Sequence record: MK308676.1
Reading direction: 5' to 3' (one strand)
Length of the DNA: 64,000 nucleotides
Part shown: positions 39,613-59,559 of the stretch, piece after piece
Layout: each line of letters begins with the position of its first letter
Numbering within the stretch: position 1 is the stretch's first letter
Notes under the pieces: model-generated
What the model was told of the DNA's origin: nothing
What the model saw: only the letters and a program-made list of their open reading frames with translations
Databases searched by the model: none
Program-made: the position numbers and the translations under genes

Positions 39613-40611
39613 ATGGCTTTATTACCGTTTGATGAAACCGGTAAACTCGCATCTAACTTGAAGCGAGAATCCCATACCGTTAACAGTGTAAACGTTAACT
39701 TCCATAACTTTATCCTTCCGGACTGGGCACCGTTCTTTAAGACGGGCTTTACAGTCTTCCATGTAGAGTCAGGTCGTTACCTGGACGAAGGCGTAGATTT
39801 CTTCTTCTCGCATTACTTCGAACTGGCCGATGACAAACTGGCCGATAAAGTTTATAGTTCCATTACTTTCTTTGATAAGAACATTACTGGTACATTCCAG
39901 CTATCAATGCAGTCGTTAGGCGGAGACTTTGTAGACTCTGCAACTCAGGCTTTAGAAAGTGGCTTAGATACTCTGGCAAACCTTAGTGCGGTACGCTGGG
40001 AAGATATTGTTACTCCTCCTACTTTCCCCGTGACTTCGCACGAACACGTAGTGACTGGCGTGGAAGGCGTAAACCGTCACCTAGAAGAGATGACGAAGAT
40101 TCGTGAAGCAATTGAGAAGATGTGGGATGAGCTTACTCTTTCCGACATCACGGATTTCGATTCAGAGTTCCGTGCTCCGCTGCTATCTAGCTTAAGTGCC
40201 TTAACCGCAGCAATCGTTGCTGACAGTCGTCCACGTGACCTGCCGCATTACTACTCGCTGTTGTTCACCGACGACGCCTCAGGCGCAAGTGATGTGGATT
40301 TAGGCGTAGTAACTCAAGGTTCTTGGGTACAGCTACCTCTGACTATGTTAGTCGCCCAACCTGGCGAGTACAAGCTAACGCACAACATCGGTGCGGAGAT
40401 TGAAGCTCCAGCCGACATTAAAGTGCTGTATCGTTGGACCTTTAACGGTGTCCCTGTTGGACGCTCAATGGCAAACGGCGCTATACACACCATCAATGCA
40501 AATACGCAAGTTCGCTTAGAAGCGAAAGTAATTGGTGCGGATACCACTAAGTTCCTACTAGCGTCCGCTGAACATGCTTCTGGCATCGAAGGCACGTTCC
40601 TTTCAAACTAA
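39613..40611 (+). CDS. baseplate/fibre-attachment protein, paralogue 1
   Basis: N-terminal PFDETGKLASNL..E motif shared with 40622 and 53756. Confidence 0.6.
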   Translation: MALLPFDETGKLASNLKRESHTVNSVNVNFHNFILPDWAPFFKTGFTVFHVESGRYLDEGVDFFFSHYFELADDKLADKVYSSITFFDKNITGTFQLSMQSLGGDFVDSATQALESGLDTLANLSAVRWEDIVTPPTFPVTSHEHVVTGVEGVNRHLEEMTKIREAIEKMWDELTLSDITDFDSEFRAPLLSSLSALTAAIVADSRPRDLPHYYSLLFTDDASGASDVDLGVVTQGSWVQLPLTMLVAQPGEYKLTHNIGAEIEAPADIKVLYRWTFNGVPVGRSMANGAIHTINANTQVRLEAKVIGADTTKFLLASAEHASGIEGTFLSN

Positions 40612-40621
40612 GGTGATTTAA

Positions 40622-41548
40622 ATGGCTTACACAGATTATAACTTCGACCCTACAGCCGAAGCGCCTGCCAACCTCATCTCTCAAGAGGTACATGCGTTGG
40701 ACATGGCTACGTTTGTAGGCGTCATTCCTGACCAAGGTGCCTTCTTTGAAAAGGGACTGGTCGTGGAAGCACGAGCGAGTTCGTCTGACCCTTGGGTTGA
40801 ACTAACTCCTTATTTCGACTTTGTCTTCTCTCCTCCATTCGTAGATGCCGGTGCGAGAACAACCCGTAAACAGGTATTCTCTTACATCGTGTTGAATGAA
40901 GACCGAGGCGTCTATTCCGACGTCCGTTTAACATACCAAGCAATCGGTAAGTACCGCGATTCAGAAATGTTCACTTTACTAAATGCAGCTACTTTCGACC
41001 GCAGCCTGTCTGCTGAATGGGTAGCGTTCTCGAGCTACATCGACACGATGTCGCACGTGACGCGCGAAGAGACATTGGTTGGGAAGGGTACTCTAGAAGT
41101 TCTAGCCGCAATGGTAGATAAGTGGACTGAAGCTATCCAGAACCCGCACGCTCAAGGGAAGAACCTAGGGCAAGACGTGGCTCGCTTAGAACAGAAAGTC
41201 GCCAAAGCACTAACGACAGATGCTTACGCCGAACTAACCGCACAGAATGACTTCAGTCAGGCAGTTGTTTCAGGTACAGCATACGAAGTGAAAGTTACTG
41301 ACGACGAAGTAGAGCTACATAAAGGCATGCTTCTAATCAAGTCGTCAACAGGGGATGCGTATAGCGTAGACGTACTAGGCCGTAAAGCCGGCTCTACTGT
41401 GCACTCTGCTTTATTTAGCCAGAGCCATAACAACGGGGTTTTAGGGACCGTAGCCGTCACTCGCTCTTCTGACGCAATTGTTATCCGCGTGACTCCTTCT
41501 GTCGCAGGCACCATGTACTATAAAACTGTTTCAGAAATCAGAGGCTAG
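40622..41548 (+). CDS. baseplate/fibre-attachment protein, paralogue 2
   Basis: N-terminal YNFDPTAEAPANLISQE motif. Confidence 0.6.
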   Translation: MAYTDYNFDPTAEAPANLISQEVHALDMATFVGVIPDQGAFFEKGLVVEARASSSDPWVELTPYFDFVFSPPFVDAGARTTRKQVFSYIVLNEDRGVYSDVRLTYQAIGKYRDSEMFTLLNAATFDRSLSAEWVAFSSYIDTMSHVTREETLVGKGTLEVLAAMVDKWTEAIQNPHAQGKNLGQDVARLEQKVAKALTTDAYAELTAQNDFSQAVVSGTAYEVKVTDDEVELHKGMLLIKSSTGDAYSVDVLGRKAGSTVHSALFSQSHNNGVLGTVAVTRSSDAIVIRVTPSVAGTMYYKTVSEIRG

Positions 41549-41553
41549 TAAAG

Positions 41554-43116
41554 ATGAATAATCTTCGTAAATACATAGGGCTAAAGTTAGCCCATTGGGG
41601 TAAGTTCGTGTTCCCTTACGGCGCGATGACCGCCCAAAGAACCACTGACGGAGAAGACGGCGCCGCATTTATCGACTCCGACTTAAACGCTTTAAGACTG
41701 CATTTGGGCGGGACATATAAACAGCAAGCCTCGTTGGTTTATAATCCTGCGGCCATTGTCTCCGATACGAACGAAACCGTCCCAGGTATGCTCCGTGCGG
41801 TTGATACATCTGGCGGCCCTATTGTTGTAGACCTAGACCCGACTCTTCCTGCGGGCTCAATGGTGGGCTATATTGACGTTACGGGTACGTGGGCAACGAA
41901 TAAGTTTTCTCTAAGGGCAGCCGCGAATATCCAAGGCGAAGCCGTTAAGGAGTATACCACGGCGTTTGGGTCCATTCAGTTAATCAAGCATGCGACTGCC
42001 GGCTGGATTCCATTTGGTGGCGGAGTAGGTGGCGGAGAAGGAGGCTCGGGAATTGGCCTCCCGGAAGGGGAGCTGGTCCATGGTACGTCCTATACCTTAA
42101 AGGTAGGTGTCCCTGCGTTACTCGACTTAGGCAAGACCTTCACAACGACCGGGTTTAACGTTCACTTTGAAAGAACGATGGATTACACTGCGGCCGATTG
42201 GGAATATACGCTGCCGAACGTCACATCGCTCCACTTACCTGAAGTCTATAACGTGAAAGCCGACCCCACGCAATCCGGTGACGCTGTGGCCGACCCAGAA
42301 GCCGGCCACTGGAAACTACCTGCCGACCCTGGACGTGCTATCCTAAAGCACCCTACCTTAAAGAAATGGATGCTCGTCCGTTTGGATGTCGCTCAAGAGT
42401 TCTTCCTTCAGATTGACGAAGAAGAATACGACCACCCTGCGAGAGTACAGACATGGGCATCAGTCGATGCCGGTACGGGCGAAAGGACTATTCTGCCAAA
42501 CGCCGAAATAAAACTAACAGACCTGACTTTAACTCTGCCTTTACCACCAAGTGGCGCAGTGGGAGATACGGTCGCATTCTACGACATATGGAAACTCGCT
42601 TCATTCGCGAATGTGATTCTAGAGGTAGACGGCGCGCGGTCTTTAGACATGGACGGGAGAAGCTTTGCTATCGACGTCGATGGTGCCTCCGCCGAAATAC
42701 AAGCCGTGCAACAGCGTGGCTGGGTAGCGGTCCGCTGGAACGTCGGCGCCGACCCGATGAATGACGAAGCCCCACATAGTAACTTAGTCGTAGGCAGCAT
42801 AAGTCACGACTCTACTGACGACTACACGTCATCCAATGGTTCAATCGAGCCAACTACGGAAGGCAGTGACGTCAAAGTAATGAATATTACCGAAGCAACC
42901 ACAATTCAGCCCCCACTTTTGAAGTCAGGTCCTGTTACTTGGCTCACTTACAAAATCGTACAAGGCAACACAGCATACCCTGTGGAGTTTACTAGCGATT
43001 ACGTAATCGTTGATGGGGTAGAGGCCTCCAAGGCACCTAACTCAGTTACGTGGGCCAGAGTTCTGGTCTCGGGTGACGGTAAGTACGATGTGTGGTTGTC
43101 TTCACGTCCTTTATAA
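41554..43116 (+). CDS. tail-fibre base with two T4 gp34-like repeats and a C-terminal adaptor domain
   Basis: VDTSGGPIVV.L...G..VGYIDVTGTWATN and LTLPLPPSGAVGDTVAFYD repeats; C-terminal YKIVQGNTAYPVEF...SGDG domain. Confidence 0.6.
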   Translation: MNNLRKYIGLKLAHWGKFVFPYGAMTAQRTTDGEDGAAFIDSDLNALRLHLGGTYKQQASLVYNPAAIVSDTNETVPGMLRAVDTSGGPIVVDLDPTLPAGSMVGYIDVTGTWATNKFSLRAAANIQGEAVKEYTTAFGSIQLIKHATAGWIPFGGGVGGGEGGSGIGLPEGELVHGTSYTLKVGVPALLDLGKTFTTTGFNVHFERTMDYTAADWEYTLPNVTSLHLPEVYNVKADPTQSGDAVADPEAGHWKLPADPGRAILKHPTLKKWMLVRLDVAQEFFLQIDEEEYDHPARVQTWASVDAGTGERTILPNAEIKLTDLTLTLPLPPSGAVGDTVAFYDIWKLASFANVILEVDGARSLDMDGRSFAIDVDGASAEIQAVQQRGWVAVRWNVGADPMNDEAPHSNLVVGSISHDSTDDYTSSNGSIEPTTEGSDVKVMNITEATTIQPPLLKSGPVTWLTYKIVQGNTAYPVEFTSDYVIVDGVEASKAPNSVTWARVLVSGDGKYDVWLSSRPL

Positions 43117-43126
43117 GGAGTAAGGA

Positions 43127-46100
43127 ATGAATCCCGAAGCCAAGCAAGTTGGCCATTTAGAGAGCGACGTTAAAGGTCGCTCTTTTGACCGATACAAAAT
43201 AAAAGGCTCTCTGTCTTTAAACCCGCCTTTGGGCGGAGTGCAACCGCCTTTTCTAGCATATACGCAAAAGGATGGAAACCGCCAAATAGGCACTGTCTCA
43301 CTTTGGATACGTCGAAGAGGTGTGGCAAACAAGTCCCCCTCTACAACGGACGAGACTATATTTAGCCATCAGGCGTCATCGACTACGGCCTCTTACGGCG
43401 GAATGGGATTCGATTCCAGCGGCCATCTAGCCCACTTCATGTCTGACGGCACCGCTACGCAGTACGGCATGATAACGAAAGAGCGCTTTGTAGACTGTTC
43501 TCGCTTCTACCATATTGTGGTTCACTGGAATACATGGATATCGGATGCTAACCAACGCATGCGCATGTTCGTTGACGGCAAGGAAATCAAATCGTTCATT
43601 CACTTTACCATGCCGCCGCTCGGCTACCAGGGGAAAGTGCATAATGCGGCTTATCCGTTTACCATCGGTCACGTTCCGGGACTGTCTGCTTATAATTACT
43701 TCGCTTTAAATGCCGAGATTGCAGACTTTGCCCTAGTTGATGGCCAGGCACTATTCCCGAAAGACTTTGGGCACTTTGATACCCAAGATAACTGGCGTCC
43801 AAGCTTCCCGAGCTTCGAAGGATGGGGACCTAACTCTCTGTTTTTGACCTGGGATAAACAGGCTAACGGAATGACCTCGCATGTCATTAATCGCCCTTCG
43901 CAATATGCCCCGGATGAGACCGACGATAAGAAGCCTATCTCTACGGTGCCTACGCCAGGTATTAAAGCCGACATCACCATACACAAGTCGTACAACCACA
44001 CGTCAAACCAACATATGTTCTTGCAGGACTCAGTCCGCGGAGACGGCTGGTTCACTACGTTCTCAGAAGCTACGATTAACTCGCGCTACCATGGTCGACC
44101 TGCGCCGGCACCCAATGGGGAAGATGAACACTTAAGGTTCAGCGGCTCCTTTAACTGGGAGAAACGTACGGATAATGAGCCGACATATTGGACACACTTC
44201 CTCTTTGCTACGGGACCCGAACACGGCATCAGTATCGTTCCTCACGATGGTACCGCCGCAGAAAAGAGAATTGAGCACGGTCTGGGGCGTAAGCCGGACT
44301 TAGCCATAAACGTGGTCCAGGAATCCGGAGCAAGCTACCCGATGTATACTTGGGCCAAAGGCTTTACGGATACTAACGACGATTCTCGCCTAAATCTCCA
44401 TAATGGCTCAGGGGTCTTTACAGCACCTGGAGCAGACCACTGGCGAAACTCCTTAACGGACGAAACCTATTTCGGATTCGGTAGTGGGAGCGCGAACAAC
44501 AGCGCATCTGGTAGAAACTTCATCACGTATTTCTTTGCGTCCGTTCCCGGAAAGTCCCAGTACTTTAAATGGGAACATCGCGGGTCTAACACTAGGACGC
44601 GTTTTGAATGCGGTTTCCGCCCGCGCTTCTTCTTCTGGAAGACGGCAACGCCGTCGGGTGAGACTGCCGATGTCGGTGCTTGGGTGGTTGTTGACTGTCG
44701 AGACGGTACGGCTTGGGAATTCGACCGCACGCGCGGCGGATACTACTCTTACAGTGCGACTTACTTCAATCCGGCTGAGGTAGACGATACCGGTTTCTCA
44801 ATGGGCCACGACCTGGCCAGCATAGACGGCATTATCATGGCCTTCGCGGACGAGTCGGACCTAAACCGCTGTGCCAAGTCAATAATGAACGATAACCGTG
44901 TTCGGCCGATTAACTTCCATGGCACGGCGGACATCAGTGACGCAACTCCAGATAACCCAGGTGTAATCCTTAGCTGGAATAATGCTAACCGCTGGGCATC
45001 CGCAAACGGAGCAGCTCACCAGAGCCAGAGAGCCACGGAAGGCGGTTATCGCCTAGAGCTTTCACATACGCGTACCAATACCGCGGTAGGCTTAGGGCTT
45101 TCTCGCTCATTGCCGGAAAGCGGTAAGTGGTACTTTGAGGTAGATAGTTGCTATACGTTCGTTTTATGCGGCTACCAATTCATGGACGGTGCCCAGAACG
45201 GATACGACTACTACGACTACGTCAAAGATACGCCGGGGTACGTATATGCTGGCGGCGTAAAGAACACACGCAGAAGTCACTACATTGCCTTGGATATGGA
45301 TGCGCGGACATTACATGTCACTACCTCCGACGGCAAGGTGTTCACTCTACCGGTTCCAGACGCCGACGAACGCACTACGGGCGATTATCAGTTCTTCGTA
45401 TCCTCTAACGTCGCGTCTAAAGATACGGCCTCCATCAACTTAGGGCAGCGCCCTTTTGTAAATGAGATGCCAGTGGGCTACCGTCCTCTGAACGACCTCG
45501 GCAACTATCAGGAAAACTCGATTGAGCCTGAGAAATACTTCGACAACTTCATTTACAATGGCCTGCAAGCTTGCCATCAGGACATGTCGTCTACGTGGGC
45601 TTACTGGGGCGTGAAGTCTTTTGAAATCGACGGCGAACTTTACCTAGCCCGCCGCCGCACGCACAGGATAGCGAACCCGCCGGTTGCCGCGGACTGGGTT
45701 AACCAAGGACATGTGGAAATATGGCTCTGGAACAGACATACTAAGAAGTTCAACGAACATCATACCTTGGCCATGCCTTCGGGCGGATACGCAATAGATG
45801 TGAAGTCGATAGATGGAGAGACGTATCTTTCTGCGGGGTCACACTACAACGGCTCACACGACATCACTGGCGGAGCATACCTCTTTAGATGGAACCGGAC
45901 ACACAAGAGATTCGAAACATTAGTTCGCCGCAATGAAGGTACCGGGCACATAGGAACCGAGATTTTCGACATCGATGAAGACCATTTGGGCTGGATAATG
46001 TCATCTCACCGCAACGGTACTGTCTTTGACTTGGATTCTCACTTCTTTAAAGTGGAGAAACAAACAGGCAATGTTGTAAAGGTCCAGGCTATCCATACGG

Positions 46101-48832: not shown

Positions 48833-48842
48833 GGAGTAAGAA

Positions 48843-49262
48843 ATGCGTTCATTTTCTAAGAAATTTGGACGCGGCCCTGCCTCTCAAATCAGTAAAGGCA
48901 CCAAGAGCGCGGGTTTCCGCGCCGATGGTGCGCTCCTGGTCACAGGCAGTGTCGTAAACACCCCTATCACTTTGCCCTATGCTGCAAACGTGGAGCTATC
49001 CTTAGCAGATAGCGATACGCAGCATCTAGAACTAGCTGGCGATGTGCATATTACTGCGCCGGAGCTAAGAGTAGGTGGGTCCTGGAAAATCTATATAAGG
49101 CAAGATGCGACAGGCGGACACGATGTAACCTTCGGGGCTAACCTAAAGAACATCTATGGTACACCGGTGTTGTCTGCCGCAAACGCGACGACGTTAATGA
49201 CCCTAATCGGTCGAGGGGATGGTAATTTTGATTACACCCTAACGGCCGTTGCCACGATTTAA
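48843..49262 (+). CDS. small fibre adaptor protein
   Basis: GGSWKIYIRQDATGGHDVTF...RGDG domain resembling the C-terminus of 41554..43116. Confidence 0.55.
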   Translation: MRSFSKKFGRGPASQISKGTKSAGFRADGALLVTGSVVNTPITLPYAANVELSLADSDTQHLELAGDVHITAPELRVGGSWKIYIRQDATGGHDVTFGANLKNIYGTPVLSAANATTLMTLIGRGDGNFDYTLTAVATI

Positions 49263-49282
49263 ACTAAACAAACGAGGTTAAC

Positions 49283-52200: not shown

Positions 52201-53650
52201 CTATCTGTCTTGTGCTGCTTTGATGACGGCGGGCCGTAAGAGTGCGACGTATCGAGTCGACCCGGAAACAGGGAACCTTGCTCTCGTGTTCGCAGGGCCT
52301 AACGTAAACCAAGCGCGCTCTTTGGCAGTCAATACGGCTAAAGACGGTAACACCTACATGTTGATGTCATACACGGGAACGAGCAACAAGCTCTTCAAGT
52401 GGGACCCTGTTAACGAGGACTGGATTGAGGATGTCGCGCCTGGGTCCTGGGCAAACTGCTACGGAATGAGCACCTTCAAAGAAGGAGAAGAGGTTTACTT
52501 CGCAATGGCGAATGCGGAATATACTTCCTCAAACGTACTGCATCACTTTGACCCGGTTACGAAGGGGCTGACTCCTATCGTTACGGCGGCTTCACAAAAC
52601 GCACACGATGCTCAAAGCATTAAGTATCGCGGCGTGTGGTATACGGCATTCGCGAACCACCGCACGTCGAGCAGCTATGCCCAAGGCTACATCACTGTGG
52701 TGACCTCTAAAGTTGACCCCGACACAGGAATATTGAAAGCAGGTCGCTTCATTGAGATGCCTAAGGGCGCTGACTTAATGTGGGTTAAGGACAGAACCAC
52801 ACCGGGCATTGCTCATCGTTTGTACAGTCCTAAGATGGTAGATAAGGAACTCTATCCGGGCCTAAACCTACCTGCTGGAAATTCGGCCACCGTAGACTGG
52901 CACGATGACGGCGTGTTGTTACAAGGCGGTTATACCGGACACAATACCGGCAACATTAACCACGTGGCATACTTCTGGAAAACTGGCCCTGAGTACGGCA
53001 TTGATTTCTCTTTGCAAACCTCGGGGCCGGATGGAACAACCGCGGTGACACACGAACACAATTGCGGCGACATCCCGGAAGTTTTGATGATAAAAGGACT
53101 AACGAATAACTCATCGTGGCATGTCAGGTTTGAGGATTTTGCGGATACCGATACCTTGCTCTTGGACACGAACACCGTAAGGTATACGTTGCCTGGCGCT
53201 AAGTATTGGGATAAGGCAAACTTCAATGAGAAGTCCGTATCGCTGTTCGCAGCGAATGCAATTGGTGTCAACCAAGGATTCGCAATGTTGGCTATTCGTT
53301 CCGTCCCGGGCTATTCAAAAACCGGTTTTTATTGGGGCAATGGCAACGCGTCGGGTATCGATTTTAACCTTGGATTTAAACCAGCATGGATGTTGGTCAA
53401 GATTGAAAACGTCGTCGGTAACGATTGGGTAATCTTCGATTCGTCGCGTTCACCGTTTAACAAGGACGGGATGGCGAGATTGCGAGTTAACGGTACTCAG
53501 GTTGAGGACGCAGCGGAAAATAACGACATCTTCTTTACGTCAACTGGCTTTAAGTGTGACGGTACGGGAAGTTCCATGAACCGACTGAATGCTAAGTACA
53601 CATTCATCGCGTTTGCGGAAAACCCGTTCGAACACACCAACGCTCGATAA
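49283..53650 (+). CDS. giant fibre/receptor-binding protein B: LamG + SPRY + 7 EPTP/EAR-like repeats (paralogue of A)
   Basis: KWCYSIWIK/WQHLFV LamG; RGRCYWEV SPRY; GFEPD/GFKPAW motifs; 7 repeats at about 51650-52730; ends FIAFAENPFEHTNAR. Confidence 0.7.
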   Translation: MLLPNIDGGVVSKARGDINVAPPLYDPEGSIFLDGRDGEGGMLQFRPETPSDSTKWCYSIWIKNGGFSYSDRHFTLLGAVNQNGIPSALNTSRLDDNMAYIAIDDSSTFKLSNITNNATIDTYTLPIKFKDSADWQHLFVRFDTTRDILELFVNGVFAGDVVVAKDILRFGDTSHYHYIGADSYSRTRDAYFTDPALIFGEGQLDVNDFGYTDEHGVWRPKDLTQSLPKSIWKGSSFYLQPGKTPRFTEEAEGGIAHGHKYQRGFQRFRVGFEPDMVMVFSTKYGFAEGADFTFKELPELSINASNEVGAVADPNGVKYFHDGFSMGTSGNFHNENGFPYSYLAFKKGAKYGIDIIHYTGDGQDNRRVAHELEQRPLSTWIIPVDVNANRTYNHIELGPNRVMTLEDGELTASTGYIRNLTDKEVVVSNSANVNASGVRYAMICFGNKQGVMSVEHLVGPGNSLHSGSTETPIDFHGLVAFTRRMAGSGNRALDIITNDSVRSISSAYAVAYPNNSANNPQFFSSNQLNWLTTVAETIGYAARADTRSIFKACKSVVNDVQLIPRRMSTHDALSDDSPFRNLGVWKNAETNSTSSFHSGGLGAHLGNGATAQAKWSKSIRGRCYWEVNVESSGSGYYYLVGLTGNPGYTSAAYIDWSYYVVYYANNGTILSSPPGTGGEQLGTTTGGGHRHIYSMLWDPEIRTLKMYRDGSLLFEQDMSAYDLPDSIYPYIRHASGAQSTVFAMNDGRFPFLYPELADNAPSLMEDGLKPIADIKNSQVAFKPVAYKAGDNSGHLFSYTGQPASTTCNMFEADGKLYLYKANFGDGSTHHVNDELIRINEDGSFEVVLEGQYGSATYDTRHFESNGRHFLIVCDYNKGAWGSANTGIGIITYEFHPKTETLTTISVLPNGGVNRLSLYEFNGELFLARCVWGTSYENIRIYKWQPDHLTWKEGGYEALTNATAAQFWERDGTLYLSCAALMTAGRKSATYRVDPETGNLALVFAGPNVNQARSLAVNTAKDGNTYMLMSYTGTSNKLFKWDPVNEDWIEDVAPGSWANCYGMSTFKEGEEVYFAMANAEYTSSNVLHHFDPVTKGLTPIVTAASQNAHDAQSIKYRGVWYTAFANHRTSSSYAQGYITVVTSKVDPDTGILKAGRFIEMPKGADLMWVKDRTTPGIAHRLYSPKMVDKELYPGLNLPAGNSATVDWHDDGVLLQGGYTGHNTGNINHVAYFWKTGPEYGIDFSLQTSGPDGTTAVTHEHNCGDIPEVLMIKGLTNNSSWHVRFEDFADTDTLLLDTNTVRYTLPGAKYWDKANFNEKSVSLFAANAIGVNQGFAMLAIRSVPGYSKTGFYWGNGNASGIDFNLGFKPAWMLVKIENVVGNDWVIFDSSRSPFNKDGMARLRVNGTQVEDAAENNDIFFTSTGFKCDGTGSSMNRLNAKYTFIAFAENPFEHTNAR

Positions 53651-53662
53651 GTAAAAAGAATA

Positions 53663-53702
53663 CCTCCCTAGTCTCTCGGGACTAGGGAGGGTCTTTATTT
53701 TT
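53663..53702 (+). terminator. intrinsic terminator
   Basis: CCTCCCTAGTC-TCTCGG-GACTAGGGAGG followed by a T-rich run. Confidence 0.8.
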
Positions 53703-53755
53703 TAACAAATCAAATAGTGCTATACACTTATTTCTTCTGGCCGGAGAACTATTAA

Positions 53756-54745
53756 ATGTCAATCCAAACGCTATACAAATACCAGTTCGACAAGTACGGA
53801 AATAACTCCGCTAACTTGATTCCAAATGAACCGGTGAAGTTCGATACTCCGCGTATCGTTCCTTTCGTACTGAGAGAAGGTAACTTCTATCAGAAAGACT
53901 TAACTATCCGAGATAAAGCAGACAACAGTTTATTGGTCTTAGGTACCGACTATAACCTAGTTGGCCTAGATGCTGACCTTACAGCAGAGACAGGCTTAAC
54001 TGTAGCAGGCGGTATCGAGTTAGCCGATAAAACATTCATCGGTGAATTGGAAGTTACCTATCGCTGCGTAGGTGGACCGCAAGGCGAATCGCGCGCTCTT
54101 TATCTGGAACTAATCGAAGCAATCACAAACGCAGGAACTAACCCTAGTGTTCTTTGGGAATCCATCATTGGTCGCCCTCAGCGCTTCCCGCCTGAAATCC
54201 ACTCACACTTACTGAGCGAACTGACTGAACTTGAGAAACTCTATCAGTCAATGCAGGACATGACTAATGCAATCGTCAACTCTAAGCCGATGTATGGTTC
54301 CAACCAAAACATCTTAGAACAGATTGAAGGCATCATTCAAATCCAGGCAGCGATGCAGTTAGCACTTAACCGTGTGGCTACAGGCGTAGGCTCAGTCGCG
54401 TTAATTAACCAAGTGCGTGATAATCTCGCTAACGTTCATAAGCAGTTCGATAAGACGACCAACACCGTTGGCGTTACTTGGGCAGACGTAGCAGTTATCC
54501 CTGAAGCGGACTTCAACAACGCACGCGGCGTCATCTCTATTGTTGATGCAACCGACTCCATGCAGATGGATTTCGATATTTCGTGGACTACCGCGAAAGA
54601 CCCGTCTTACACACACTATGGCCATATCGGCACAGATGAACTCATCAACGCGATGCAAGTCATTAAACAGTCAGGTAACGTTGTAGTTCAAATTCGAACC
54701 ACTAAAGACGCAACCGTCAAGACTAAATTTACTCACCTGCTTTAA
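53756..54745 (+). CDS. baseplate/fibre-attachment protein, paralogue 3
   Basis: N-terminal YQFDKYGNNSANLIPNE and WESIIGRPQRFPPEIHSH (compare WEDIVTPPTFPVTSHEH in 39613). Confidence 0.6.
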   Translation: MSIQTLYKYQFDKYGNNSANLIPNEPVKFDTPRIVPFVLREGNFYQKDLTIRDKADNSLLVLGTDYNLVGLDADLTAETGLTVAGGIELADKTFIGELEVTYRCVGGPQGESRALYLELIEAITNAGTNPSVLWESIIGRPQRFPPEIHSHLLSELTELEKLYQSMQDMTNAIVNSKPMYGSNQNILEQIEGIIQIQAAMQLALNRVATGVGSVALINQVRDNLANVHKQFDKTTNTVGVTWADVAVIPEADFNNARGVISIVDATDSMQMDFDISWTTAKDPSYTHYGHIGTDELINAMQVIKQSGNVVVQIRTTKDATVKTKFTHLL

Positions 54746-54754
54746 GGAGCACCC

Positions 54755-55201
54755 ATGAAGATTACTTTTCATTTCTTCGATAACCGCGCAATCGGTTCGC
54801 TACTTATCAAAGCACGCCTTTCCGAGCATTTCTCTCATGTGGGAATGGAGTTTGAGAACGGCGCGTTTATTCACAGCACTATGCTGCACGGCACCGTCAT
54901 GCAGAAACTTAGCGACCAGCCAACTGAGCCTCTTGCGTCGGTAACTATCGATGTAGACGAAGAAGCGTACATGGAAGCGTACGAATGGGCAGTTCATCAA
55001 GTGGGTGGCAAATACGACTACAAGGGAATCATTGGTTTCATGTTCGCTAAGAAATGGAACGATGAGAATGCGTTCTTCTGTTCTGAGCTAGGACGTAAAG
55101 TATTTGAAATCGCGACAGGGAAAATCCTGAAGTATTATAATTTGGTTACGCCCGGCGAATTACGCATGCTTGTAGCTATGCACAATCTAGACGGCAAGTA
55201 A
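54755..55201 (+). CDS. permuted papain-like NlpC/P60 enzyme (YiiX/YebB, DUF830-like)
   Basis: FSHVG (His), YDY and FFCSEL (Cys) in permuted order. Confidence 0.8.
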   Translation: MKITFHFFDNRAIGSLLIKARLSEHFSHVGMEFENGAFIHSTMLHGTVMQKLSDQPTEPLASVTIDVDEEAYMEAYEWAVHQVGGKYDYKGIIGFMFAKKWNDENAFFCSELGRKVFEIATGKILKYYNLVTPGELRMLVAMHNLDGK

Positions 55202-55217
55202 CTTAAGGGAAAAGACT

Positions 55218-58200
55218 ATGAGTAGCAAATTAATCTTTACCATGCAATATTTCCGCGGGGAGAAAAAGCGCGAATATCTCGCTGACCCTGAAACCGGACT
55301 TATTCCTGGTACTGGTGAAACGGGCGGAGGTCTAGAAGAATACGACCGCGCCAAAGCATGGGATAAAGACGACGTCGTTATTCGCGACGGCGCTATCTTC
55401 CAAGCGAACGAAGACATTCCTGCGGGCTCTTCTTTCATTGAAGGCCTTACTGGCCCGACTTGGCTTAAGTTAGGCGCAGAAGCGGTAGCGACACTTCCCG
55501 ACTACGCTGTAGGCATTCGTTATCTTAAAGACCAAGCGATTGCCCGTGGTCGAGTTATCTACCGTGCGAAGAATGACTTTACTTCTGCCGCGTGGAATCC
55601 AGCACAATGGGAAACGGTCTTCTCTGAAGACGCAGTTCGCGATAAGGTAGCGGACTTCAGTACTGCACAGTCTTACGTAACGCATGAATTAGTTGCCTAC
55701 AACGGTGACATCTATGCGGCAAACGAAGATATGGCGGCAGGGGCCTTTGACGCATCTAAATGGCAGAATCTAACTACGCCTAACGTAACATACGTCGATG
55801 ACTATGCCCCGGGCACAGTCTATACCAAAGACGCTGTAGTTATGCGCAATGGTCAATTGTTCCGTGCAACGCAACAAACTGCGACAGCATGGGATGAAGG
55901 CGATTGGCAAGCGGTTTCTTCAGTTTCTACTGTTCGTGGTTACTGGGACCTTAATGCAACCTATAAAGCAAACGAAATAGTTATCGCTAATGACCGCTTC
56001 TATCGTGCTAACGGCGATATCGGTTCAGGCACTACGTTCACTGTAGGTACTGGTACTGAAGAATGGACTGAGGTGTCGGGCCCTGTTACTCCGCCTATCA
56101 CGGCAGATGACTTTAAAGCTTCTACGCTTTATGCTAAGAATCAGGTTATTGTAGTTAACGGCATCCTTTATCGGGCTAAGGCAGAGTTCACTTCACTCTC
56201 TGCATTTAGCATCGCGGATTGGGACCCTGTCTCTTATGACCCAGAAACGGCCGTAGACGCATGGCAAGCTAATACTGACTATAAAGCAGGGCAGTTAGCC
56301 ACGTTAGTTGTAAATGGTCGTAACACGCTTTACAGAGCGCGTGCGGACATCACAGGCGGAGCGAGTTTCGTAGCGGCCGAATGGGACGACCTAACTCAAA
56401 CGTCGACCTGGCGTGCTGAGTGGGATATCTCGAACATCTATGCTAAGGACGACGTTGTGTGGCGTGCAGGGCATCTGTACATTGCCAACGATGCGGTACC
56501 TATCAACACTGCATGGGTAGAAGGCATCACCGGCGCTACGTGGGCTCGTTTGTTGGCCGAACCAGTATCTAAGATTTCTGTTTGGGCAGCAACAACTTCT
56601 TATCAGAAAGATGAACTTCTAGCTTATGATGGCAACATCTATCGCGTGGAAGCCCCTTTCGTTTCTGGCGCGGCATTTACAAGCGGTGGCCTAGAACTGC
56701 TCACTGCCGGTAAGTATACTAAGATTCCTGCATTCCGTGGCTCTAACGCTTACGTCCAAGACGAGACGATTGCCGAAGGCGGAATCCTTTACCGCGCTAA
56801 AGCGGACTTTACGTCAGCTACAAACTTCAATGAAGCAGACTGGGAAGTTATCGCGGACATCGCGACAAACATCCTGTACGACTTCAGTATCACAGAAGAC
56901 TATGTAGAAAATGAAATCGTTTTCCACTTAGACTCCATCTGGCGTGCTAAAGGCGACCTTGCTCCTGGGGCTTGGGACGAGTCCGATTGGGAATTCGTTT
57001 CTGAATACTCAACCTTTAAAGGTCAGCACGTCCAGGCACGTGACTACAAGCAAGACGACGTGGTAATCCACAACAACCGATTATATCGAGCAAACTCGAA
57101 TATTGCGGGCGGCACTGCTTTCTTGGCAGGTAGCGGAGGTAACCAATGGACTGAGGTTTCCCCTCCAGGAAATCCTTCTGCTCCGGACTGGGCAAGCTCA
57201 ACGGCATATGTTCAGCACAACTTGGTCATTCACGGTGGCGTCCTTTACCGCTGTAAGACAGACCATACTTCAGGAAGTAGCTTCCTCGCTTCTCAGTGGG
57301 AGACATTGAAAGCAGAAGCGGCTACCTTGGCTTCGACTTACCAGAATGGCCAAGAATATGTCCTTGACCAACTGATTGAATACAACGGCATTCTTTACCG
57401 CTGTATCGAAGCGATGCTAAGTTCACCTGTAACGTTCGAGCCAGACAAATGGCAAGGCGTATCGGTTTCTTATATCCGCATCTCTGCGCATAGTGCTTCA
57501 GCCGTTTATCGTGAAGGCGAATTGATTTGGCACGTGAATCGCTTGTATCGTGCTAAGGCAGGCATTAACCCAGGTCGTGCTTTCTCGCTTAACGATTGGG
57601 CTATCTCTGAAGATACCAACTACGTGAGCGAATATGCGGAGAATGAAGACTACCGCCTAGGCCAACTTATCCGTTCAGGTGTTGACTTATATATCGCAAA
57701 CGAAGCTATTACCGGTGCTCCTGCTGTACTTGACGAAACTAAGTGGAACCGCGTAGGTTACCGCCCAACCGTTCAAGGCGCGCATGACGATACTCTTGCG
57801 TATAAGCAAGGGGACATTGTTCTTAAGGAAGGTACTTGGTACGAAGCTAACGCGGACATCGCGGCTAACGTGGCCCTGTCTGAAGGTACTACTGGCGCCA
57901 CATGGAAACGTGTAACCGACAGCATGACCATCAAGGCACATGCGGCAGACGCAATCTTCTTCCCTGGTCAGCTCTGTCTACATGAAGAGCGCGTTTACAC
58001 AGCGAAGGAATTCCTAACGGTAGACAGCTCTAATACGTTCCAGTCTATCAAGTGGGAGAAGCTAGGTTCGTTTGTTACTCTAGCGGAAGACTACCAAGAC
58101 AACATCGAATACAAGAAAGACCAAATCATCTTCCATCTGAGCGTTCTTTACCGCCGCATTGCGACGGGCACCGATACGACTTGGACGGCAGCAAATTGGC

Positions 58201-59552
58201 AAGCTCTTTCTTTAACCGCGGCGATTCTAAACGACTTCGACAACACGAAGAACTATGCTGCCAACGAGGTCATCACTCGCGGAGGTGCTACCTACCGTGT
58301 TAAGACTCCTGGCATTAAAGCTAGCTTCGTAGAAAGCGATTGGGACCGCATCGATGAGCGTCCTACGTTCCGTGGCGAATGGGCTCAGGCTAATGCTTAT
58401 AAAGCAGCTGACTTCGTAGTTCGCGACAGTATCCTTTACACTGCCAACGATGATGTTCCGGCAACAACTGCATTCTCAGTCGGCACTACCGGCGCTACAT
58501 GGAAACGTCAGTCGCCAGAGAACATTGCAGTTGAGCACGTAGGTGCTGAGATTACGGTAACTGAGGGACAACCTGTTCTTCATCGCCGTGTTCTTTACTT
58601 CGCAACACAGACGGTAACCATTCCTGATGCGTTCGATGAAACCGGACTTAAGAAGATTGGTCGCTTCGGCATGACCGAGCAAACCTTCGAAGCCGATACT
58701 TGGTTCCCTGCTGGTTGGTTAATGCGTCAAGACGATAAAGTCTACAAAGCGAAAACGGACTTTACCACTGCGACGGCCTTTGATGTTGCTGACTGGGATT
58801 TAGTTTCTCATGACTACGCGTTCATTGTAGAGTTCAGCACAGCTGACACTTACTACAAAGACCAAATCGTTATCAACTCTAAACTACTTTACCGTGCTAA
58901 TACAGACGTTACTGTAGCGGGTGCTTGGGACTCTGCCCAATGGGACCAATTGGCTCCAGCTGAAGCAGCTCGTATCGAGACTCATGACGAGACTAACGAA
59001 TACCTACTTGACGACATTGTCTTCAAAGACGGTATGTTGTGGCGTGCTAACTCTGCCATCGCAGCGAACACTCCGTTCGTTAAGGGCACGAGTGCCAACG
59101 AATGGCGTGCAGCCATTGAACTTAAGATTAAAGCGTTTGCTGAAGGTGAGAACATTCTTACCGGAGAGTACCGCTTAATCGAAGGTCACTTAGCCGTAGC
59201 AAAAGAAGACATTGCATCTACTGCTGCGTACGCTACGGAAACTGAGAAGTGGAGTATTCTGTCTCACGACATCTCCAAACTTAAGATGGTTTACCCAGTC
59301 CGCGAATACTTACCGGCCGAGACAAACATCAACTATGATGGTTCAATCGACGGTTCAGTATCCGACACTTGGGTAGTCACGGGTAGCTTACCGACTACAG
59401 AACTTTCAGTGTTACTATGGTTAGGTTACGAGTTCCACTTAGGTGGCCTAGACGTAACTGACAAAGTAGTACAGAAGGGTTCGTCAGCACCGTATGGTTT
59501 CGGCATTAGCGGTGTCTGGATTGAGTCAGGCGACGTCCTAGAGGTACGATAA
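55218..59552 (+). CDS. virion-associated protein with about 26 CBM5/12 (ChtBD3)-like repeats
   Basis: Repeated W/F....Y...D.V...G.LYRA.......F....W units of about 45-50 aa along the whole length. Confidence 0.72.
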   Translation: MSSKLIFTMQYFRGEKKREYLADPETGLIPGTGETGGGLEEYDRAKAWDKDDVVIRDGAIFQANEDIPAGSSFIEGLTGPTWLKLGAEAVATLPDYAVGIRYLKDQAIARGRVIYRAKNDFTSAAWNPAQWETVFSEDAVRDKVADFSTAQSYVTHELVAYNGDIYAANEDMAAGAFDASKWQNLTTPNVTYVDDYAPGTVYTKDAVVMRNGQLFRATQQTATAWDEGDWQAVSSVSTVRGYWDLNATYKANEIVIANDRFYRANGDIGSGTTFTVGTGTEEWTEVSGPVTPPITADDFKASTLYAKNQVIVVNGILYRAKAEFTSLSAFSIADWDPVSYDPETAVDAWQANTDYKAGQLATLVVNGRNTLYRARADITGGASFVAAEWDDLTQTSTWRAEWDISNIYAKDDVVWRAGHLYIANDAVPINTAWVEGITGATWARLLAEPVSKISVWAATTSYQKDELLAYDGNIYRVEAPFVSGAAFTSGGLELLTAGKYTKIPAFRGSNAYVQDETIAEGGILYRAKADFTSATNFNEADWEVIADIATNILYDFSITEDYVENEIVFHLDSIWRAKGDLAPGAWDESDWEFVSEYSTFKGQHVQARDYKQDDVVIHNNRLYRANSNIAGGTAFLAGSGGNQWTEVSPPGNPSAPDWASSTAYVQHNLVIHGGVLYRCKTDHTSGSSFLASQWETLKAEAATLASTYQNGQEYVLDQLIEYNGILYRCIEAMLSSPVTFEPDKWQGVSVSYIRISAHSASAVYREGELIWHVNRLYRAKAGINPGRAFSLNDWAISEDTNYVSEYAENEDYRLGQLIRSGVDLYIANEAITGAPAVLDETKWNRVGYRPTVQGAHDDTLAYKQGDIVLKEGTWYEANADIAANVALSEGTTGATWKRVTDSMTIKAHAADAIFFPGQLCLHEERVYTAKEFLTVDSSNTFQSIKWEKLGSFVTLAEDYQDNIEYKKDQIIFHLSVLYRRIATGTDTTWTAANWQALSLTAAILNDFDNTKNYAANEVITRGGATYRVKTPGIKASFVESDWDRIDERPTFRGEWAQANAYKAADFVVRDSILYTANDDVPATTAFSVGTTGATWKRQSPENIAVEHVGAEITVTEGQPVLHRRVLYFATQTVTIPDAFDETGLKKIGRFGMTEQTFEADTWFPAGWLMRQDDKVYKAKTDFTTATAFDVADWDLVSHDYAFIVEFSTADTYYKDQIVINSKLLYRANTDVTVAGAWDSAQWDQLAPAEAARIETHDETNEYLLDDIVFKDGMLWRANSAIAANTPFVKGTSANEWRAAIELKIKAFAEGENILTGEYRLIEGHLAVAKEDIASTAAYATETEKWSILSHDISKLKMVYPVREYLPAETNINYDGSIDGSVSDTWVVTGSLPTTELSVLLWLGYEFHLGGLDVTDKVVQKGSSAPYGFGISGVWIESGDVLEVR

Positions 59553-59559
59553 AGTCATA

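What the first reader, a model, noticed from the sequence alone, without database searches (positions are those of the whole stretch)
39613..59552. Possible three-fibre modular adsorption apparatus assembled from parts of different phage lineages
Seen: three paralogous ORFs (39613, 40622, 53756) share an N-terminal (Y/P)xFDxxG/A...(A/S)NL...E motif, and the window has three candidate distal receptor-binding proteins (43127, 49283, 55218). Each LamG giant is directly preceded by a gene ending in the same adaptor-like domain (YKIVQGNTAYPVEF...SGDG in 41554; KIYIRQDATGGHDVTF...RGDG in 48843). 41554 also carries T4 gp34-like repeats. Inference: phiKZ-type baseplate anchors connect through adaptors to marine-phage-type lectin fibres and a CBM filament, giving a branched multi-receptor system.
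Basis: inference. Interest (0 to 1): 0.7.

Follow-up and report, generated by a model that had tools for sequence, protein, structure and literature searches.

The report
Mosaic tail-fibre module of Vibrio jumbo phage

Summary
[quoted passage not shown] A1, A2 and A3 are true members of the phiKZ gp131-135 fibre-base family and sit beside a gp130-like gene. They are 1:1:1 orthologs of three genes in relatives whose module holds only one giant, so anchor number does not track fibre number.

B is not gp34-like. Its N-terminal part matches the XD1-type sandwich of T4 gp9/gp10 and CBA120 TSP4. B's C-terminal domain and the whole of C belong to PF26209, which also has an XD1-type fold.

B-F1-C-F2 is a four-gene cassette shared collinearly with the otherwise unrelated Vibrio phage GR7B and with marine metagenome contigs. 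The junction lies inside B.

In 53 viral contigs the PF26209 domain always ends its protein. The tightly coupled next gene is often a lectin protein (LamG 12/44 downstream versus 0/48 upstream).

F3 consists of 26 CBM5/12-like repeats, and its BONAISHI ortholog lies at another locus.

Best reading: a phiKZ-type base carries a connector (B), which carries lectin giant F1, and C adds a second giant, F2. All physical contacts are inferred. This is a new variant of a known kind, of moderate interest.

The parts
38137..39375 (-). gp130-like baseplate-periphery protein (412 aa), divergent from A1
   Evidence: It has the same size, position and orientation as 201phi2-1 gp215, which is annotated as phiKZ gp130-like. 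Collinear BLASTP/phmmer matches are weak (E 1e-3). It hits phrog_3337 at E 4e-28. It is conserved in BONAISHI, C-ZP2022 and sm033.
39613..40611 (+). A1, gp131-family fibre-base protein (332 aa): N-terminal docking domain of about 175 aa, helical stalk, C-terminal beta-sandwich
   Evidence: phrog_2163 E 4e-26. Ortholog of BONAISHI ORF300c at E 3e-63. Matches 201phi2-1 gp216 and gp220 at E 2e-14 and 2e-13.
40622..41548 (+). A2, gp131-family fibre-base protein (308 aa); lacks the HxH of the tail-fibre repeat motif
   Evidence: phrog_2163 E 4e-11. Ortholog of BONAISHI ORF299c at E 8e-28. Alignment A1.
41554..43116 (+). B, chimeric connector (520 aa). Residues 1-178 are clade-specific and include an XD1-type gp9/gp10-like domain at about 80-165. 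Residues 179-520 are cassette-specific and end in a PF26209-like domain at about 410-516 (window 42781-43101).
   Evidence: A profile of the B N-termini hits CBA120 TSP4-N (E 5e-7), T4 gp10 (E 7e-6) and T4 gp9 (E 0.08). The sm033 ortholog matches Pfam T4_gp9_10_N at E 4e-11. B residues 179-520 match GR7B_152 residues 175-502 (E 4e-21), whereas the N-terminal part matches only the BONAISHI-group B proteins.
43127..48832 (+). F1, lectin giant (1901 aa): LamG-like N-domain, internal DUF7483-like domain (about 364-528), 14 propeller blades (833-1558, i.e. two seven-bladed propellers), C-terminal DUF7483 (1593-1894)
   Evidence: Pfam DUF7483 E 4e-44 and EPTP E 2e-7. Blade spacing is 53-61 aa. GR7B_153 matches at 32% identity, E 1e-99. 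Marine phage hits by tblastn.
48843..49262 (+). C, free-standing PF26209 (XD1-type) domain protein (139 aa) with a conserved N-terminal extension of about 35 aa
   Evidence: The representative search gave 70 hits, and in some the domain is tandem. The sequence profile hits the C-terminus of the phiTE tail fibre at E 3e-7. The AF2 model has pLDDT 87. Foldseek hits are TSP4-N, T4 gp9/gp10, CpaA and StcE. GR7B_154 matches at 36% identity, E 1e-22.
49283..53650 (+). F2, lectin giant (1455 aa): LamG-like N-domain, seven propeller blades (811-1114), C-terminal DUF7483 (1163-1448)
   Evidence: Pfam DUF7483 E 4e-40. Full-length ortholog GR7B_155 (E 4e-86), which carries Pfam Laminin_G_3, SPRY, EPTP and DUF7483. 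Blade motifs.
53663..53690 (+). terminator-like hairpin closing the unit A1-A2-B-F1-C-F2
   Evidence: 12-bp stem with 7 G-C pairs followed by a T-rich tail. Gaps inside the unit are 5-20 nt.
53756..54745 (+). A3, gp131-family fibre-base protein (329 aa) with a conserved HxH in the tail-fibre repeat motif
   Evidence: phrog_2163 E 3e-35. tblastn hits in 173 phage records, mostly phiKZ-like. The 'W..P..FPP.H.H' motif matches 9d93 collar fibre gp4. In the AF2 model the N-domain has pLDDT about 90. Foldseek hits are tailspike N-domains and T4 gp9.
54755..55201 (+). D, conserved 148-aa protein that follows A3 in all relatives; possibly a permuted papain-like fold
   Evidence: 42-44% identity to the D proteins of the relatives. 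phrog_1128 E 1.5e-14. Only weak YiiX/YaeF and NlpC/P60 hits (E 0.03-0.13).
55218..59552 (+). F3, repeat filament (1444 aa): N-terminus of about 37 aa, 26 tandem CBM5/12-like repeats of about 51 aa (38-1352), C-terminal domain of about 90 aa
   Evidence: Pfam CBM_5_12 E 2e-34. Iterated repeat HMM. PDB matches to the N-modules of 9rkv and Milano gp124. BONAISHI ORF141 has the same architecture but lies at another locus.
59557..59584 (+). terminator-like hairpin closing the unit A3-D-F3
   Evidence: 12-bp stem with 7 G-C pairs.
59663..60076 (+). E, conserved 137-aa protein of unknown role, followed by a hairpin at 60105-60128; in the relatives it comes directly after D
   Evidence: 27-31% identity to the E proteins of the relatives (E 1e-14 to 9e-19). 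Hairpin.

Best explanation
The block is the tail-fibre (adsorption) gene module of a phiKZ-like jumbo phage. It has three layers.

Layer 1 (identity shown by homology): three inherited gp131-family proteins, A1, A2 and A3, sit next to a gp130-like baseplate gene. By analogy with phiKZ, their N-terminal domains and following helices form the fibre-attachment base at the baseplate periphery. This base is most likely an oligomeric assembly of the paralogs, not three separate sockets for three fibres.

Layer 2 (homology shown, role inferred): these are connectors built from XD1-type beta-sandwich domains. B has a clade-specific N-terminal third that plugs into this phage's base. The rest of B came with the cassette and ends in a PF26209 domain. 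C is a free-standing PF26209 domain with a short N-terminal extension.

Layer 3: these are the distal binders. F1 and F2 are strings of lectin-type domains (LamG-like, DUF7483, SPRY-like, seven-bladed propellers). F3 is a filament of 26 CBM5/12-like repeats.

Inferred mechanism: a PF26209 domain at the end of one protein is the socket for the LamG-like N-terminal domain of the protein encoded immediately after it. B would then hold F1 and C would hold F2. C-F2 would ride on the B-F1 unit rather than on an anchor of its own. Whether it hangs in series from the end of F1 or as a side branch from B is unresolved, with gene order slightly favouring series.

The B(C-part)-F1-C-F2 cassette was exchanged horizontally with another Vibrio phage lineage. 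F3 was moved into the module, and how it attaches is unknown.
For: Identity: 100% match to Yong XC31. The relatives are phiKZ-like (PMC6207643).

Anchors: an HMM of the A N-domain hits 201phi2-1 gp216, gp220, gp218 and gp219 (E 2e-29 to 1e-16). These are MS-verified virion proteins of the gp131-135 family, and they sit next to a gp130-like gene just as in this window. In phiKZ these N-domains form a hetero-hexameric fibre base beneath gp130 (PMC13250141). There are exactly three carriers in the genome. They are 1:1:1 orthologs in three relatives whose module has one giant.

Cassette: GR7B_152-155 are collinear with B-F1-C-F2 (E 4e-21, 1e-99, 1e-22, 4e-86). No flanking GR7B gene matches anything in the Yong genome. 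TARA and ENA contigs carry F1-like, C-like and F2-like genes in the same order. GC is 0.50-0.52 in the cassette against 0.456 in the genome.

Pairing rule: in 53 IMG/VR loci the domain always ends its ORF, and 49 of them have a downstream ORF starting within a few nucleotides. Downstream proteins carry Laminin_G_3 in 12 of 44, plus DUF7483, SPRY and F5/8C; upstream controls carry none in 48 (Fisher p 6e-5). In 7 loci the downstream protein carries F-type domains: six open with the F1/F2-type N-domain at residue 14-19, and five carry DUF7483.

Operon structure: hairpins delimit the units [A1 A2 B F1 C F2], [A3 D F3] and [E].
Against: XD1 is not the domain shown to dock partners in T4 gp10 or TSP4; that role belongs to XD2 and XD3. 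In TSP4 its role is described as a possible spacer, and the same fold binds glycans in StcE and CpaA (PMC8825819).

Profile-profile comparison finds no sequence link between PF26209 and the XD1 region of B.

No virion proteomics exist for Yong or its close relatives. BONAISHI was annotated by homology only.

The HxH motif is conserved in all A3 orthologs but absent from all A2 orthologs. This fits an A3 homotrimer better than an A1-A2-A3 heterotrimer.

Genome-wide, the relatives do have further giants at other loci: BONAISHI ORF141, and sm033 00299 and 00301. The mismatch between anchor and fibre numbers is therefore strict only within the module.

The IMG/VR loci are not all independent. The raised GC could partly reflect amino-acid composition.
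Confidence: 0.55

Rival explanations
1. There are three parallel fibres, each hung from its own anchor paralog, giving one anchor per fibre and a three-receptor apparatus. An example mapping is A2 to B-F1, another A to C-F2, and A3 to F3.
For: There are three anchors and three giants in the window. Each transcription unit starts with anchor gene(s) and ends with giant(s): [A1 A2 B F1 C F2] and [A3 D F3]. sm033 has three giants genome-wide.
Against: A1, A2 and A3 are orthologous 1:1:1 in relatives whose module holds one giant, and A3 is followed there directly by D-E with no F3. The BONAISHI ortholog of F3 is encoded about 130 kb away in the record. In GR7B the same B-F1-C-F2 cassette works with no gp131-type protein detected in the 19 kb examined around it. 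In phiKZ the paralogs co-assemble into one base rather than each carrying a fibre.
Confidence: 0.12
2. There is no adaptor role. The PF26209 (XD1-type) domain is itself a distal glycan- or receptor-binding tip. The lectin genes that follow it are merely co-transcribed, independently attached proteins, or they depend on it only for folding.
For: The same fold is a glycan-binding module in StcE and CpaA, and XD1 has no proven docking role. In phiTE and many other contigs the domain is the extreme C-terminal tip of a long fibre protein. Some downstream ORFs are small (60-250 aa), as tail-fibre chaperones are.
Against: A free-standing 139-aa C protein has nothing to attach it to the virion unless it binds a neighbour. 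The order F1-C-F2 is conserved in three contexts. Lectin proteins are enriched downstream but not upstream. The F-type N-domain begins at residue 14-19 in each downstream partner. B is chimeric exactly where an adaptor would be expected to be.
Confidence: 0.17
3. F3, and possibly F1 and F2, are not baseplate fibres. They are decorations elsewhere on the virion (neck, sheath or head), or adhesins for environmental surfaces such as chitin particles rather than for the host cell.
For: F3 has no adaptor gene and no recognised baseplate-docking N-domain. It consists of 26 CBM5/12-type units, a module class known for chitin binding. Its ortholog in BONAISHI lies outside the fibre module, near a glycoside hydrolase gene. 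Smaller CBM-repeat proteins occur elsewhere in the Yong genome.
Against: Similar repeat units form the tail-binding N-module of the trimeric Milano tailspike gp124 and of the 'putative tail fiber' in 9rkv. phrog_9851 and the sm033 annotation both call such proteins tail fibres. In Yong F3 is co-transcribed with A3.
Confidence: 0.15

Closest known systems
phiKZ fibre base: gp131 with paralogs gp133/gp134/gp135 beneath gp130 (PMC13250141); 201phi2-1 gp216-220
   Same: Same N-terminal domain family (E 2e-29 to 1e-16). A tandem paralog array sits next to a divergent gp130-like gene. A helical segment follows the N-domain.
   Different: There are only three paralogs, all short (308-332 aa), and none has the gp131 C-terminal propeller. 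Foreign connector and giant genes are inserted inside the paralog array. The propellers occur instead in F1 and F2, and no homology to gp131C was shown.
Branched multi-tailspike complexes built on T4 gp10-like domains (CBA120 TSP1-4, G7C gp66/gp63.1; PMC8825819)
   Same: There is a dedicated connector with a lineage-specific baseplate-anchoring N-terminus followed by gp10-family beta-sandwich domains. Several receptor-binding proteins are encoded in a row. The distal parts are exchanged modularly.
   Different: Only XD1-type domains were detected here. XD2 and XD3, the proven docking modules, were not found. The distal proteins are lectin or propeller strings, not beta-helix depolymerase tailspikes. 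The base is phiKZ-type.
T4 long tail fibre, gp34-gp35-gp36-gp37 serial chain attached via gp9 (textbook knowledge)
   Same: Gene order may mirror assembly order. A small protein lies between two large ones (C between F1 and F2, like gp35). A gp9-type XD1 domain sits at the proximal end.
   Different: No gp34, gp36 or gp37 homology was found. The giants are globular lectin strings rather than trimeric beta-fibres. Serial topology is unproven.
phiTE long tail fibre, protein 241 (Pfam PF26209 Phage_phiTE_241_C; PMC11972413)
   Same: It carries the same C-terminal domain (E 3e-7). Its distal part is thought to contact another fibre.
   Different: In phiTE the domain ends a 793-aa trimeric fibre and was not resolved. 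Here it also occurs as a free-standing 139-aa protein and is followed by lectin giants.
DUF7483/LamG 'tail fiber' proteins of pelagiphages, cyanophages and roseophages
   Same: Same C-terminal DUF7483 and LamG-like N-domain. The same PF26209-to-lectin gene pair occurs in marine and environmental viral contigs.
   Different: Those proteins are mostly 300-800 aa, in small podo- or myophage genomes. F1 and F2 are 1455-1901 aa, with added propellers, and there are two of them in tandem on a jumbo-phage base.

Membership tests
phiKZ gp131-135 fibre-base paralog family | gp131-type N-terminal domain | tested here: met
   An HMM of the A N-domains hits 201phi2-1 gp216, gp220, gp218 and gp219 at E 2e-29, 4e-26, 4e-21 and 1e-16. 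tblastn of A3 finds 173 phage records, mostly phiKZ-like. phrog_2163 matches all three.
phiKZ gp131-135 fibre-base paralog family | Tandem paralogs adjacent to and divergent from the gp130-like baseplate gene | tested here: met
   38137-39375(-) has the position, size and orientation of 201phi2-1 gp215, the gp130-like gene. Sequence similarity is weak (E 1e-3).
phiKZ gp131-135 fibre-base paralog family | Helix after the N-domain that joins a six-helix bundle | tested here: inconclusive
   The AF2 monomer of A3 predicts helices at 108-227, but with pLDDT below 50. No multimer model could be made. The phiKZ models (9XQD and others) did not appear in the PDB copies searched.
phiKZ gp131-135 fibre-base paralog family | Presence in the virion at the baseplate periphery | not testable with these tools
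   MS evidence exists only for the 201phi2-1 homologs, in the record notes.
T4 gp9/gp10-like connector (CBA120 TSP4-type branching adaptor) | XD1-type beta-sandwich domain | tested here: met
   A profile of the B N-termini hits TSP4-N residues 99-194 (E 5e-7), gp10 residues 58-141 (E 7e-6) and gp9 (E 0.08). The sm033 B ortholog passes the Pfam T4_gp9_10_N threshold (43.9 bits against a cut-off of 25). Yong B alone gives no PDB or Pfam hit.
T4 gp9/gp10-like connector (CBA120 TSP4-type branching adaptor) | XD2/XD3 jellyroll domains that dock partner trimers | tested here: inconclusive
   The sequence matches cover XD1 only.
T4 gp9/gp10-like connector (CBA120 TSP4-type branching adaptor) | Physical binding of other receptor-binding proteins | not testable with these tools
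   Only gene-order evidence is available.
Pfam PF26209 Phage_phiTE_241_C | Sequence match to the family | tested here: met
   Homologs of C (P0014, P0015, P0016) carry a precomputed PF26209 hit. A profile of the family hits the phiTE fibre at residues 665-783, E 3e-7. The local Pfam copy did not list the family for C itself.
Pfam PF26209 Phage_phiTE_241_C | Position at the C-terminal end of the protein | tested here: met
   B residues 410-516 of 520. All 53 IMG/VR hosts have 0-46 aa after the match. C is a free-standing copy.
T4 gp34 proximal long-tail-fibre repeats | Sequence or profile match to gp34 repeats | tested here: not met
   There was no gp34 hit for B or its orthologs in PDB, Pfam or NCBIfam. 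The only related signal is a weak phrog_972 'proximal subunit' hit on GR7B_152 (E 7e-4).
DUF7483/LamG lectin-type phage fibre proteins | C-terminal DUF7483 | tested here: met
   F1 E 4e-44 and F2 E 4e-40, both above the cut-off.
DUF7483/LamG lectin-type phage fibre proteins | LamG (concanavalin-like) domain | tested here: inconclusive
   There is no direct Pfam hit on F1 or F2. The assignment is transitive: the ortholog GR7B_155 has Laminin_G_3 at 28.8 bits against a cut-off of 27.6, and F1 residues 24-673 align with GR7B_155 residues 14-615 (E 2e-17).
CBM family 5/12 | Repeated CBM_5_12 sequence signature | tested here: met
   Pfam E 2e-34. There are 26 units of about 51 aa.
CBM family 5/12 | Chitin or carbohydrate binding | not testable with these tools
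   Similar units also act as a structural tail-binding module in Milano gp124.

The most novel reading that the evidence does not exclude
The PF26209 (XD1-type) domain and the LamG-like N-domain would form a portable plug-and-socket standard. It would let lectin receptor-binding cassettes move between unrelated phage lineages: phiKZ-like jumbo phages, GR7B-type myophages and small marine phages. Yong would stack two such units, B-F1 and C-F2, on a phiKZ-type base, making a compound lectin fibre of more than 3,300 residues per chain set. F3 would additionally be a chitin-surface adhesin that places the phage where vibrios live.
Probability: 0.3. Interest if true: 0.65.

Novelty: new variant of a known kind. 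Interest (0 to 1): 0.5.

Why it matters
Tail-fibre organisation in phiKZ-like jumbo phages was resolved only recently, and only for phiKZ itself. This module shows how the conserved gp131-type base can be fitted with foreign distal binders through a chimeric connector.

The recurrent gene pair, a PF26209-ending protein followed by a lectin protein, is a testable rule for annotating receptor-binding modules in marine viral metagenomes, where most such genes are labelled 'hypothetical'. It also gives two uncharacterised Pfam families (PF26209 and DUF7483) a concrete structural hypothesis.

The practical value is descriptive. It allows better prediction of which genes determine adsorption in Vibrio phages of aquaculture and coral-disease interest.

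Tried and rejected
- The word-indexed homolog search with A3 alone gave 2 hits, and with the 12-sequence alignment gave 8. The A3 model therefore rests on a shallow alignment (pLDDT 64).
- PDB sequence and fold searches did not return the phiKZ gp131-N models. The link to gp131 rests on 201phi2-1 gp216-220 and on the phiKZ paper.
- hhalign of the PF26209 family against the B N-terminal XD1 profile showed no similarity. I do not claim they are one sequence family.
- Pfam and NCBIfam on B, C, D, E and the relatives' X protein returned nothing significant for Yong B, C, E or X. PDB search on D found nothing.
- An iterated HMM for the propeller blades did not converge, and a loose regex was noisy. 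I placed blade motifs by eye and verified their positions.
- The IMG/VR scan with C alone and with the 26-sequence alignment failed. An 8-sequence alignment worked.
- C is not homologous to the relatives' X protein (215-230 aa).
- gp34 likeness was rejected.
- No literature was found on GR7B or DUF7483.
- Sigma-70 promoter matches were fewer than in shuffles (8 against 19), so they are uninformative, as expected for a phage that encodes its own RNA polymerases.

Full report
IDENTITY AND OBSERVATION

[quoted passage not shown] The 21 kb queried are identical to it, and three sister isolates match at 100% rounded identity (one nucleotide differs in MS32). The host is Vibrio mediterranei. In the record every gene of the block is 'hypothetical protein'. 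Its nearest described relatives, BONAISHI and pir03, are phiKZ-like jumbo myoviruses (PMC6207643; PMC7765460).

All ten ORFs named or implied by the finding exist. I call them:
- A1: 39613-40611
- A2: 40622-41548
- B: 41554-43116
- F1: 43127-48832
- C: 48843-49262
- F2: 49283-53650
- A3: 53756-54745
- D: 54755-55201
- F3: 55218-59552
- E: 59663-60076

THE ANCHORS

A1, A2 and A3 share an N-terminal domain of about 175 residues. All three hit phrog_2163 (E 4e-26, 4e-11, 3e-35) and align throughout. tblastn of A3 finds the domain in 173 phage records, mostly phiKZ-like phages of Pseudomonas, Erwinia, Serratia, Ralstonia, Klebsiella and Vibrio.

An HMM of the domain hits 201phi2-1 gp216, gp220, gp218 and gp219 (E 2e-29 to 1e-16). 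The record marks these as MS-verified virion proteins, paralogs of one another and similar to phiKZ proteins. gp216 is named as the gp131 homolog in the phiKZ structural atlas. There the gene array sits next to, and divergent from, a gp130-like gene. In the window the 412-aa ORF 38137-39375(-) has the same size, place and orientation, with a weak collinear match (E 1e-3).

In phiKZ, six gp131-like N-domains plus a six-helix bundle form each fibre base beneath gp130. The proposed composition is gp131x3 + gp133 + gp134 + gp135 (PMC13250141).

After the N-domain the A proteins carry one copy of the tail-fibre repeat motif 'W..P..FPP.H.H', as in the collar fibre gp4 of PDB 9d93. A predicted helical stretch and a small C-terminal beta-sandwich follow. 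In the AF2 model of A3 the N-domain has pLDDT about 90, the helices are below 50 and the C-domain is about 70. By Foldseek the N-domain resembles tailspike N-terminal domains and T4 gp9 (probability 1.0, about 110 columns). A scan of every ORF of the Yong genome finds exactly three carriers of the domain.

THE CONNECTORS

The claimed gp34 likeness of B is not borne out. A profile of the B N-termini from four phages hits CBA120 TSP4-N residues 99-194 (E 5e-7), T4 gp10 residues 58-141 (E 7e-6) and T4 gp9 (E 0.08). The 1017-aa sm033 ortholog passes Pfam T4_gp9_10_N (E 4e-11). No gp34 match appears anywhere. The matched region is the XD1 sandwich of TSP4 and gp10 (PMC8825819).

C matches B residues 410-516 and the C-terminus of BONAISHI B. 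Both hit the C-terminus of phrog_4549. Only B and C carry it in the genome.

A search of 1.8 billion representative proteins gives 70 hits. The unit of about 90 residues occurs free-standing, at protein C-termini, and in tandem (up to 29 matched stretches in one protein). Precomputed Pfam labels on homologs call it PF26209 Phage_phiTE_241_C. A profile hits the C-terminus (665-783) of the 793-aa phiTE tail fibre (E 3e-7). That distal part was not resolved and is thought to contact other fibres (PMC11972413).

One caution applies. XD2 and XD3, not XD1, are the proven docking modules of gp10 and TSP4, and the XD1 fold binds glycans in StcE and CpaA.

THE GIANTS

F1 and F2 end in DUF7483 (E 4e-44, 4e-40), and F1 holds a second, partial copy.

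F1 has 14 propeller-blade motifs spaced 53-61 residues apart (833-1558), which makes two seven-bladed propellers. F2 has seven (811-1114). Pfam EPTP hits support this.

LamG is not called directly on F1 or F2. It is called on GR7B_155, the full-length ortholog of F2, along with SPRY. F1's N-terminal 650 residues align to that protein.

tblastn places the relatives of F1 in pelagiphages, cyanophages, roseophages and one Vibrio phage. The 'marine-phage-type lectin' label is therefore fair.

F3 consists of a short N-terminus, 26 head-to-tail CBM5/12-like units of about 51 residues (38-1352), and a C-terminal domain of about 90 residues. Similar units occur in the tail-binding N-module of the trimeric Milano tailspike gp124 and in 9rkv. 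They may therefore be structural as well as, or instead of, carbohydrate-binding.

COMPARATIVE GENOMICS

BONAISHI, C-ZP2022 (pir03-like) and sm033 all have the same layout: gp130-like(-) | A1 | A2 | B | one giant | X | A3 | D | E.

Yong A1, A2, A3, D, E and the gp130-like protein are 1:1 orthologs of theirs. F1, C, F2 and F3 have no BLAST match in those modules. The three anchors are thus ancestral and do not scale with the number of giants in the module.

One caveat applies. The relatives encode further giants elsewhere: BONAISHI ORF141, and sm033 00299 and 00301. BONAISHI ORF141 has the architecture of F3, with 19 repeats and the same C-terminal domain. F3 is therefore a relocated clade gene, not a Yong invention.

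All B orthologs end in the PF26209-like domain and directly precede the giant. BONAISHI's giant keeps weak LamG-like and DUF7483-like signals.

The strongest new result concerns Vibrio phage vB_VcorM_GR7B (207 kb). It has four collinear genes, 152 (502 aa), 153 (1089 aa), 154 (141 aa) and 155 (1457 aa). They match as follows:
- 152 matches B residues 179-520 (E 4e-21)
- 153 matches F1 (E 1e-99; it lacks the propellers)
- 154 matches C (E 1e-22)
- 155 matches F2 (E 4e-86, full length)

These genes follow gp25-like and gp6-like baseplate wedge genes. None of the flanking GR7B genes matches anything in the Yong genome. B is therefore a chimera. Its first 178 residues are shared only with the BONAISHI clade, and the rest is shared with GR7B.

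Two marine metagenome contigs carry F1-like, C-like and F2-like genes in the same order. The cassette is 4-6 points richer in G+C than the genome.

A GENERAL PAIRING RULE

In 53 IMG/VR loci found with a PF26209 alignment, the domain is always at the extreme C-terminus of its ORF, whose length ranges from 131 to 1504 aa. In 49 loci a same-strand ORF starts within a few nucleotides. For the eight small hosts, the next ORF is 308-1058 aa.

Of 44 downstream proteins, 12 carry Laminin_G_3, 5 DUF7483, 4 SPRY and 2 F5/8 type C. Of 48 upstream proteins none does; these are ordinary tail or adaptor proteins. Fisher's exact test gives p = 6e-5, but the loci are not all independent. In seven loci the downstream protein carries F-type domains: six open with the F1/F2-type N-domain at residue 14-19, and five carry DUF7483.

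TRANSCRIPTION UNITS

Gaps within the block are 5-20 nt, except for 105 nt after F2 and 110 nt after F3. Both of these gaps, and the region after E, hold strong hairpins with 10-12-bp stems followed by T-rich tails. This gives the units [A1 A2 B F1 C F2], [A3 D F3] and [E].

MECHANISM

Shown: the identity of the families, the chimeric structure of B, cassette sharing, the pairing rule and the gene-order conservation.

Inferred:
- The A proteins form the phiKZ-type base.
- B's clade-specific N-terminus docks on that base or on the gp130-like periphery.
- The PF26209 domain at the end of B receives the LamG-like N-domain of F1, and C does the same for F2.
- C-F2 rides on B-F1, either in series or as a branch.

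I put 0.55 on this overall. Family assignments stand at about 0.9 and the specific contacts at about 0.4. The conserved HxH in A3 orthologs, but in no A2 ortholog, hints that A3 may be a homotrimer. The exact oligomer of the base is therefore open.

COMPARISON AND NOVELTY

Multi-RBP, branched or serial fibre systems with gp10-family connectors are well known: CBA120, G7C and the T4 long tail fibre. The gp131-type base is known from phiKZ.

Three things are new here:
- A phiKZ-type base is combined with a horizontally shared connector-plus-lectin cassette.
- The breakpoint lies inside the connector.
- A PF26209-ending gene is recurrently paired with a lectin gene.

I rate this a new variant of a known kind, with interest 0.5.

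LIMITS

No multimer prediction was available, no virion proteomics exist, and the alignment behind the A3 model was shallow. Only two structure jobs were allowed, so B, F1, F2 and F3 were not modelled.

Noticed in passing
window 53663-53690, 59557-59584, 60105-60128 (+); 60771-60742 (-): There are strong terminator-like hairpins (10-13-bp stems). Three of the four have a TTCG loop. They lie exactly in the only long intergenic gaps of the block and after the next minus-strand gene.
   Followed up: partly
window 54755-55201 (D): D is the best-conserved small protein of the module (42-44% identity in the relatives) and always follows A3. Its only family signals are weak permuted-papain (YiiX/YaeF) and NlpC/P60 hits, plus phrog_1128. 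It could be a fibre-associated enzyme or an assembly factor.
   Followed up: partly
window 48116-48118 (F1 residue 1664); locus L021: Isolate Yong MS32 differs from XC31 by a single nucleotide across the gene. The change is a non-synonymous A1664S inside the C-terminal DUF7483 domain of F1. The BLAST score suggests it is the only difference in the 21-kb block.
   Followed up: yes
outside the window: MK308674.1 240927-242336 (-) and 273695-275455 (+) (loci L009, L010): Two further Yong proteins, QAX96246 and QAX96285, carry 5 and 2-3 CBM5/12-like repeat units of the F3 type.
   Followed up: partly
window 12251-17896 (+): There is a very large ORF here (1881 aa by the ORF listing from a GTG start; the record annotates QAX96133 as 1830 aa from window 12404). 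It was not examined. The BONAISHI paper lists a 5.7-kb 'glycoside hydrolase' gene (ORF23c).
   Followed up: no
L012 (sm033 281883-288938 and 290146 onward): sm033 encodes two more giants away from its fibre module. One is a 2351-aa CBM-repeat 'tail fiber protein'. The other is a neighbouring ORF of about 2280 aa.
   Followed up: partly
L018 (Logan contig SRR33465429_2922) 8519-12718: A phage contig carries two small PF26209 proteins (245 and 189 aa). Each is followed by another ORF (223 and 689 aa). This is a second example of doubled connector-partner pairs.
   Followed up: no
L004 (C-ZP2022) and L003 (pir03): The C-ZP2022 record has many ambiguous bases, giving X in several translations. The linear pir03 record starts and ends inside its giant fibre gene, which is therefore annotated only as a misc_feature.
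   Followed up: no
alignment A1, columns around A3 residues 134-152: The HxH of the tail-fibre repeat motif is kept in all A3 orthologs, in Yong A1 alone among the A1 proteins, and in no A2 ortholog.
   Followed up: partly
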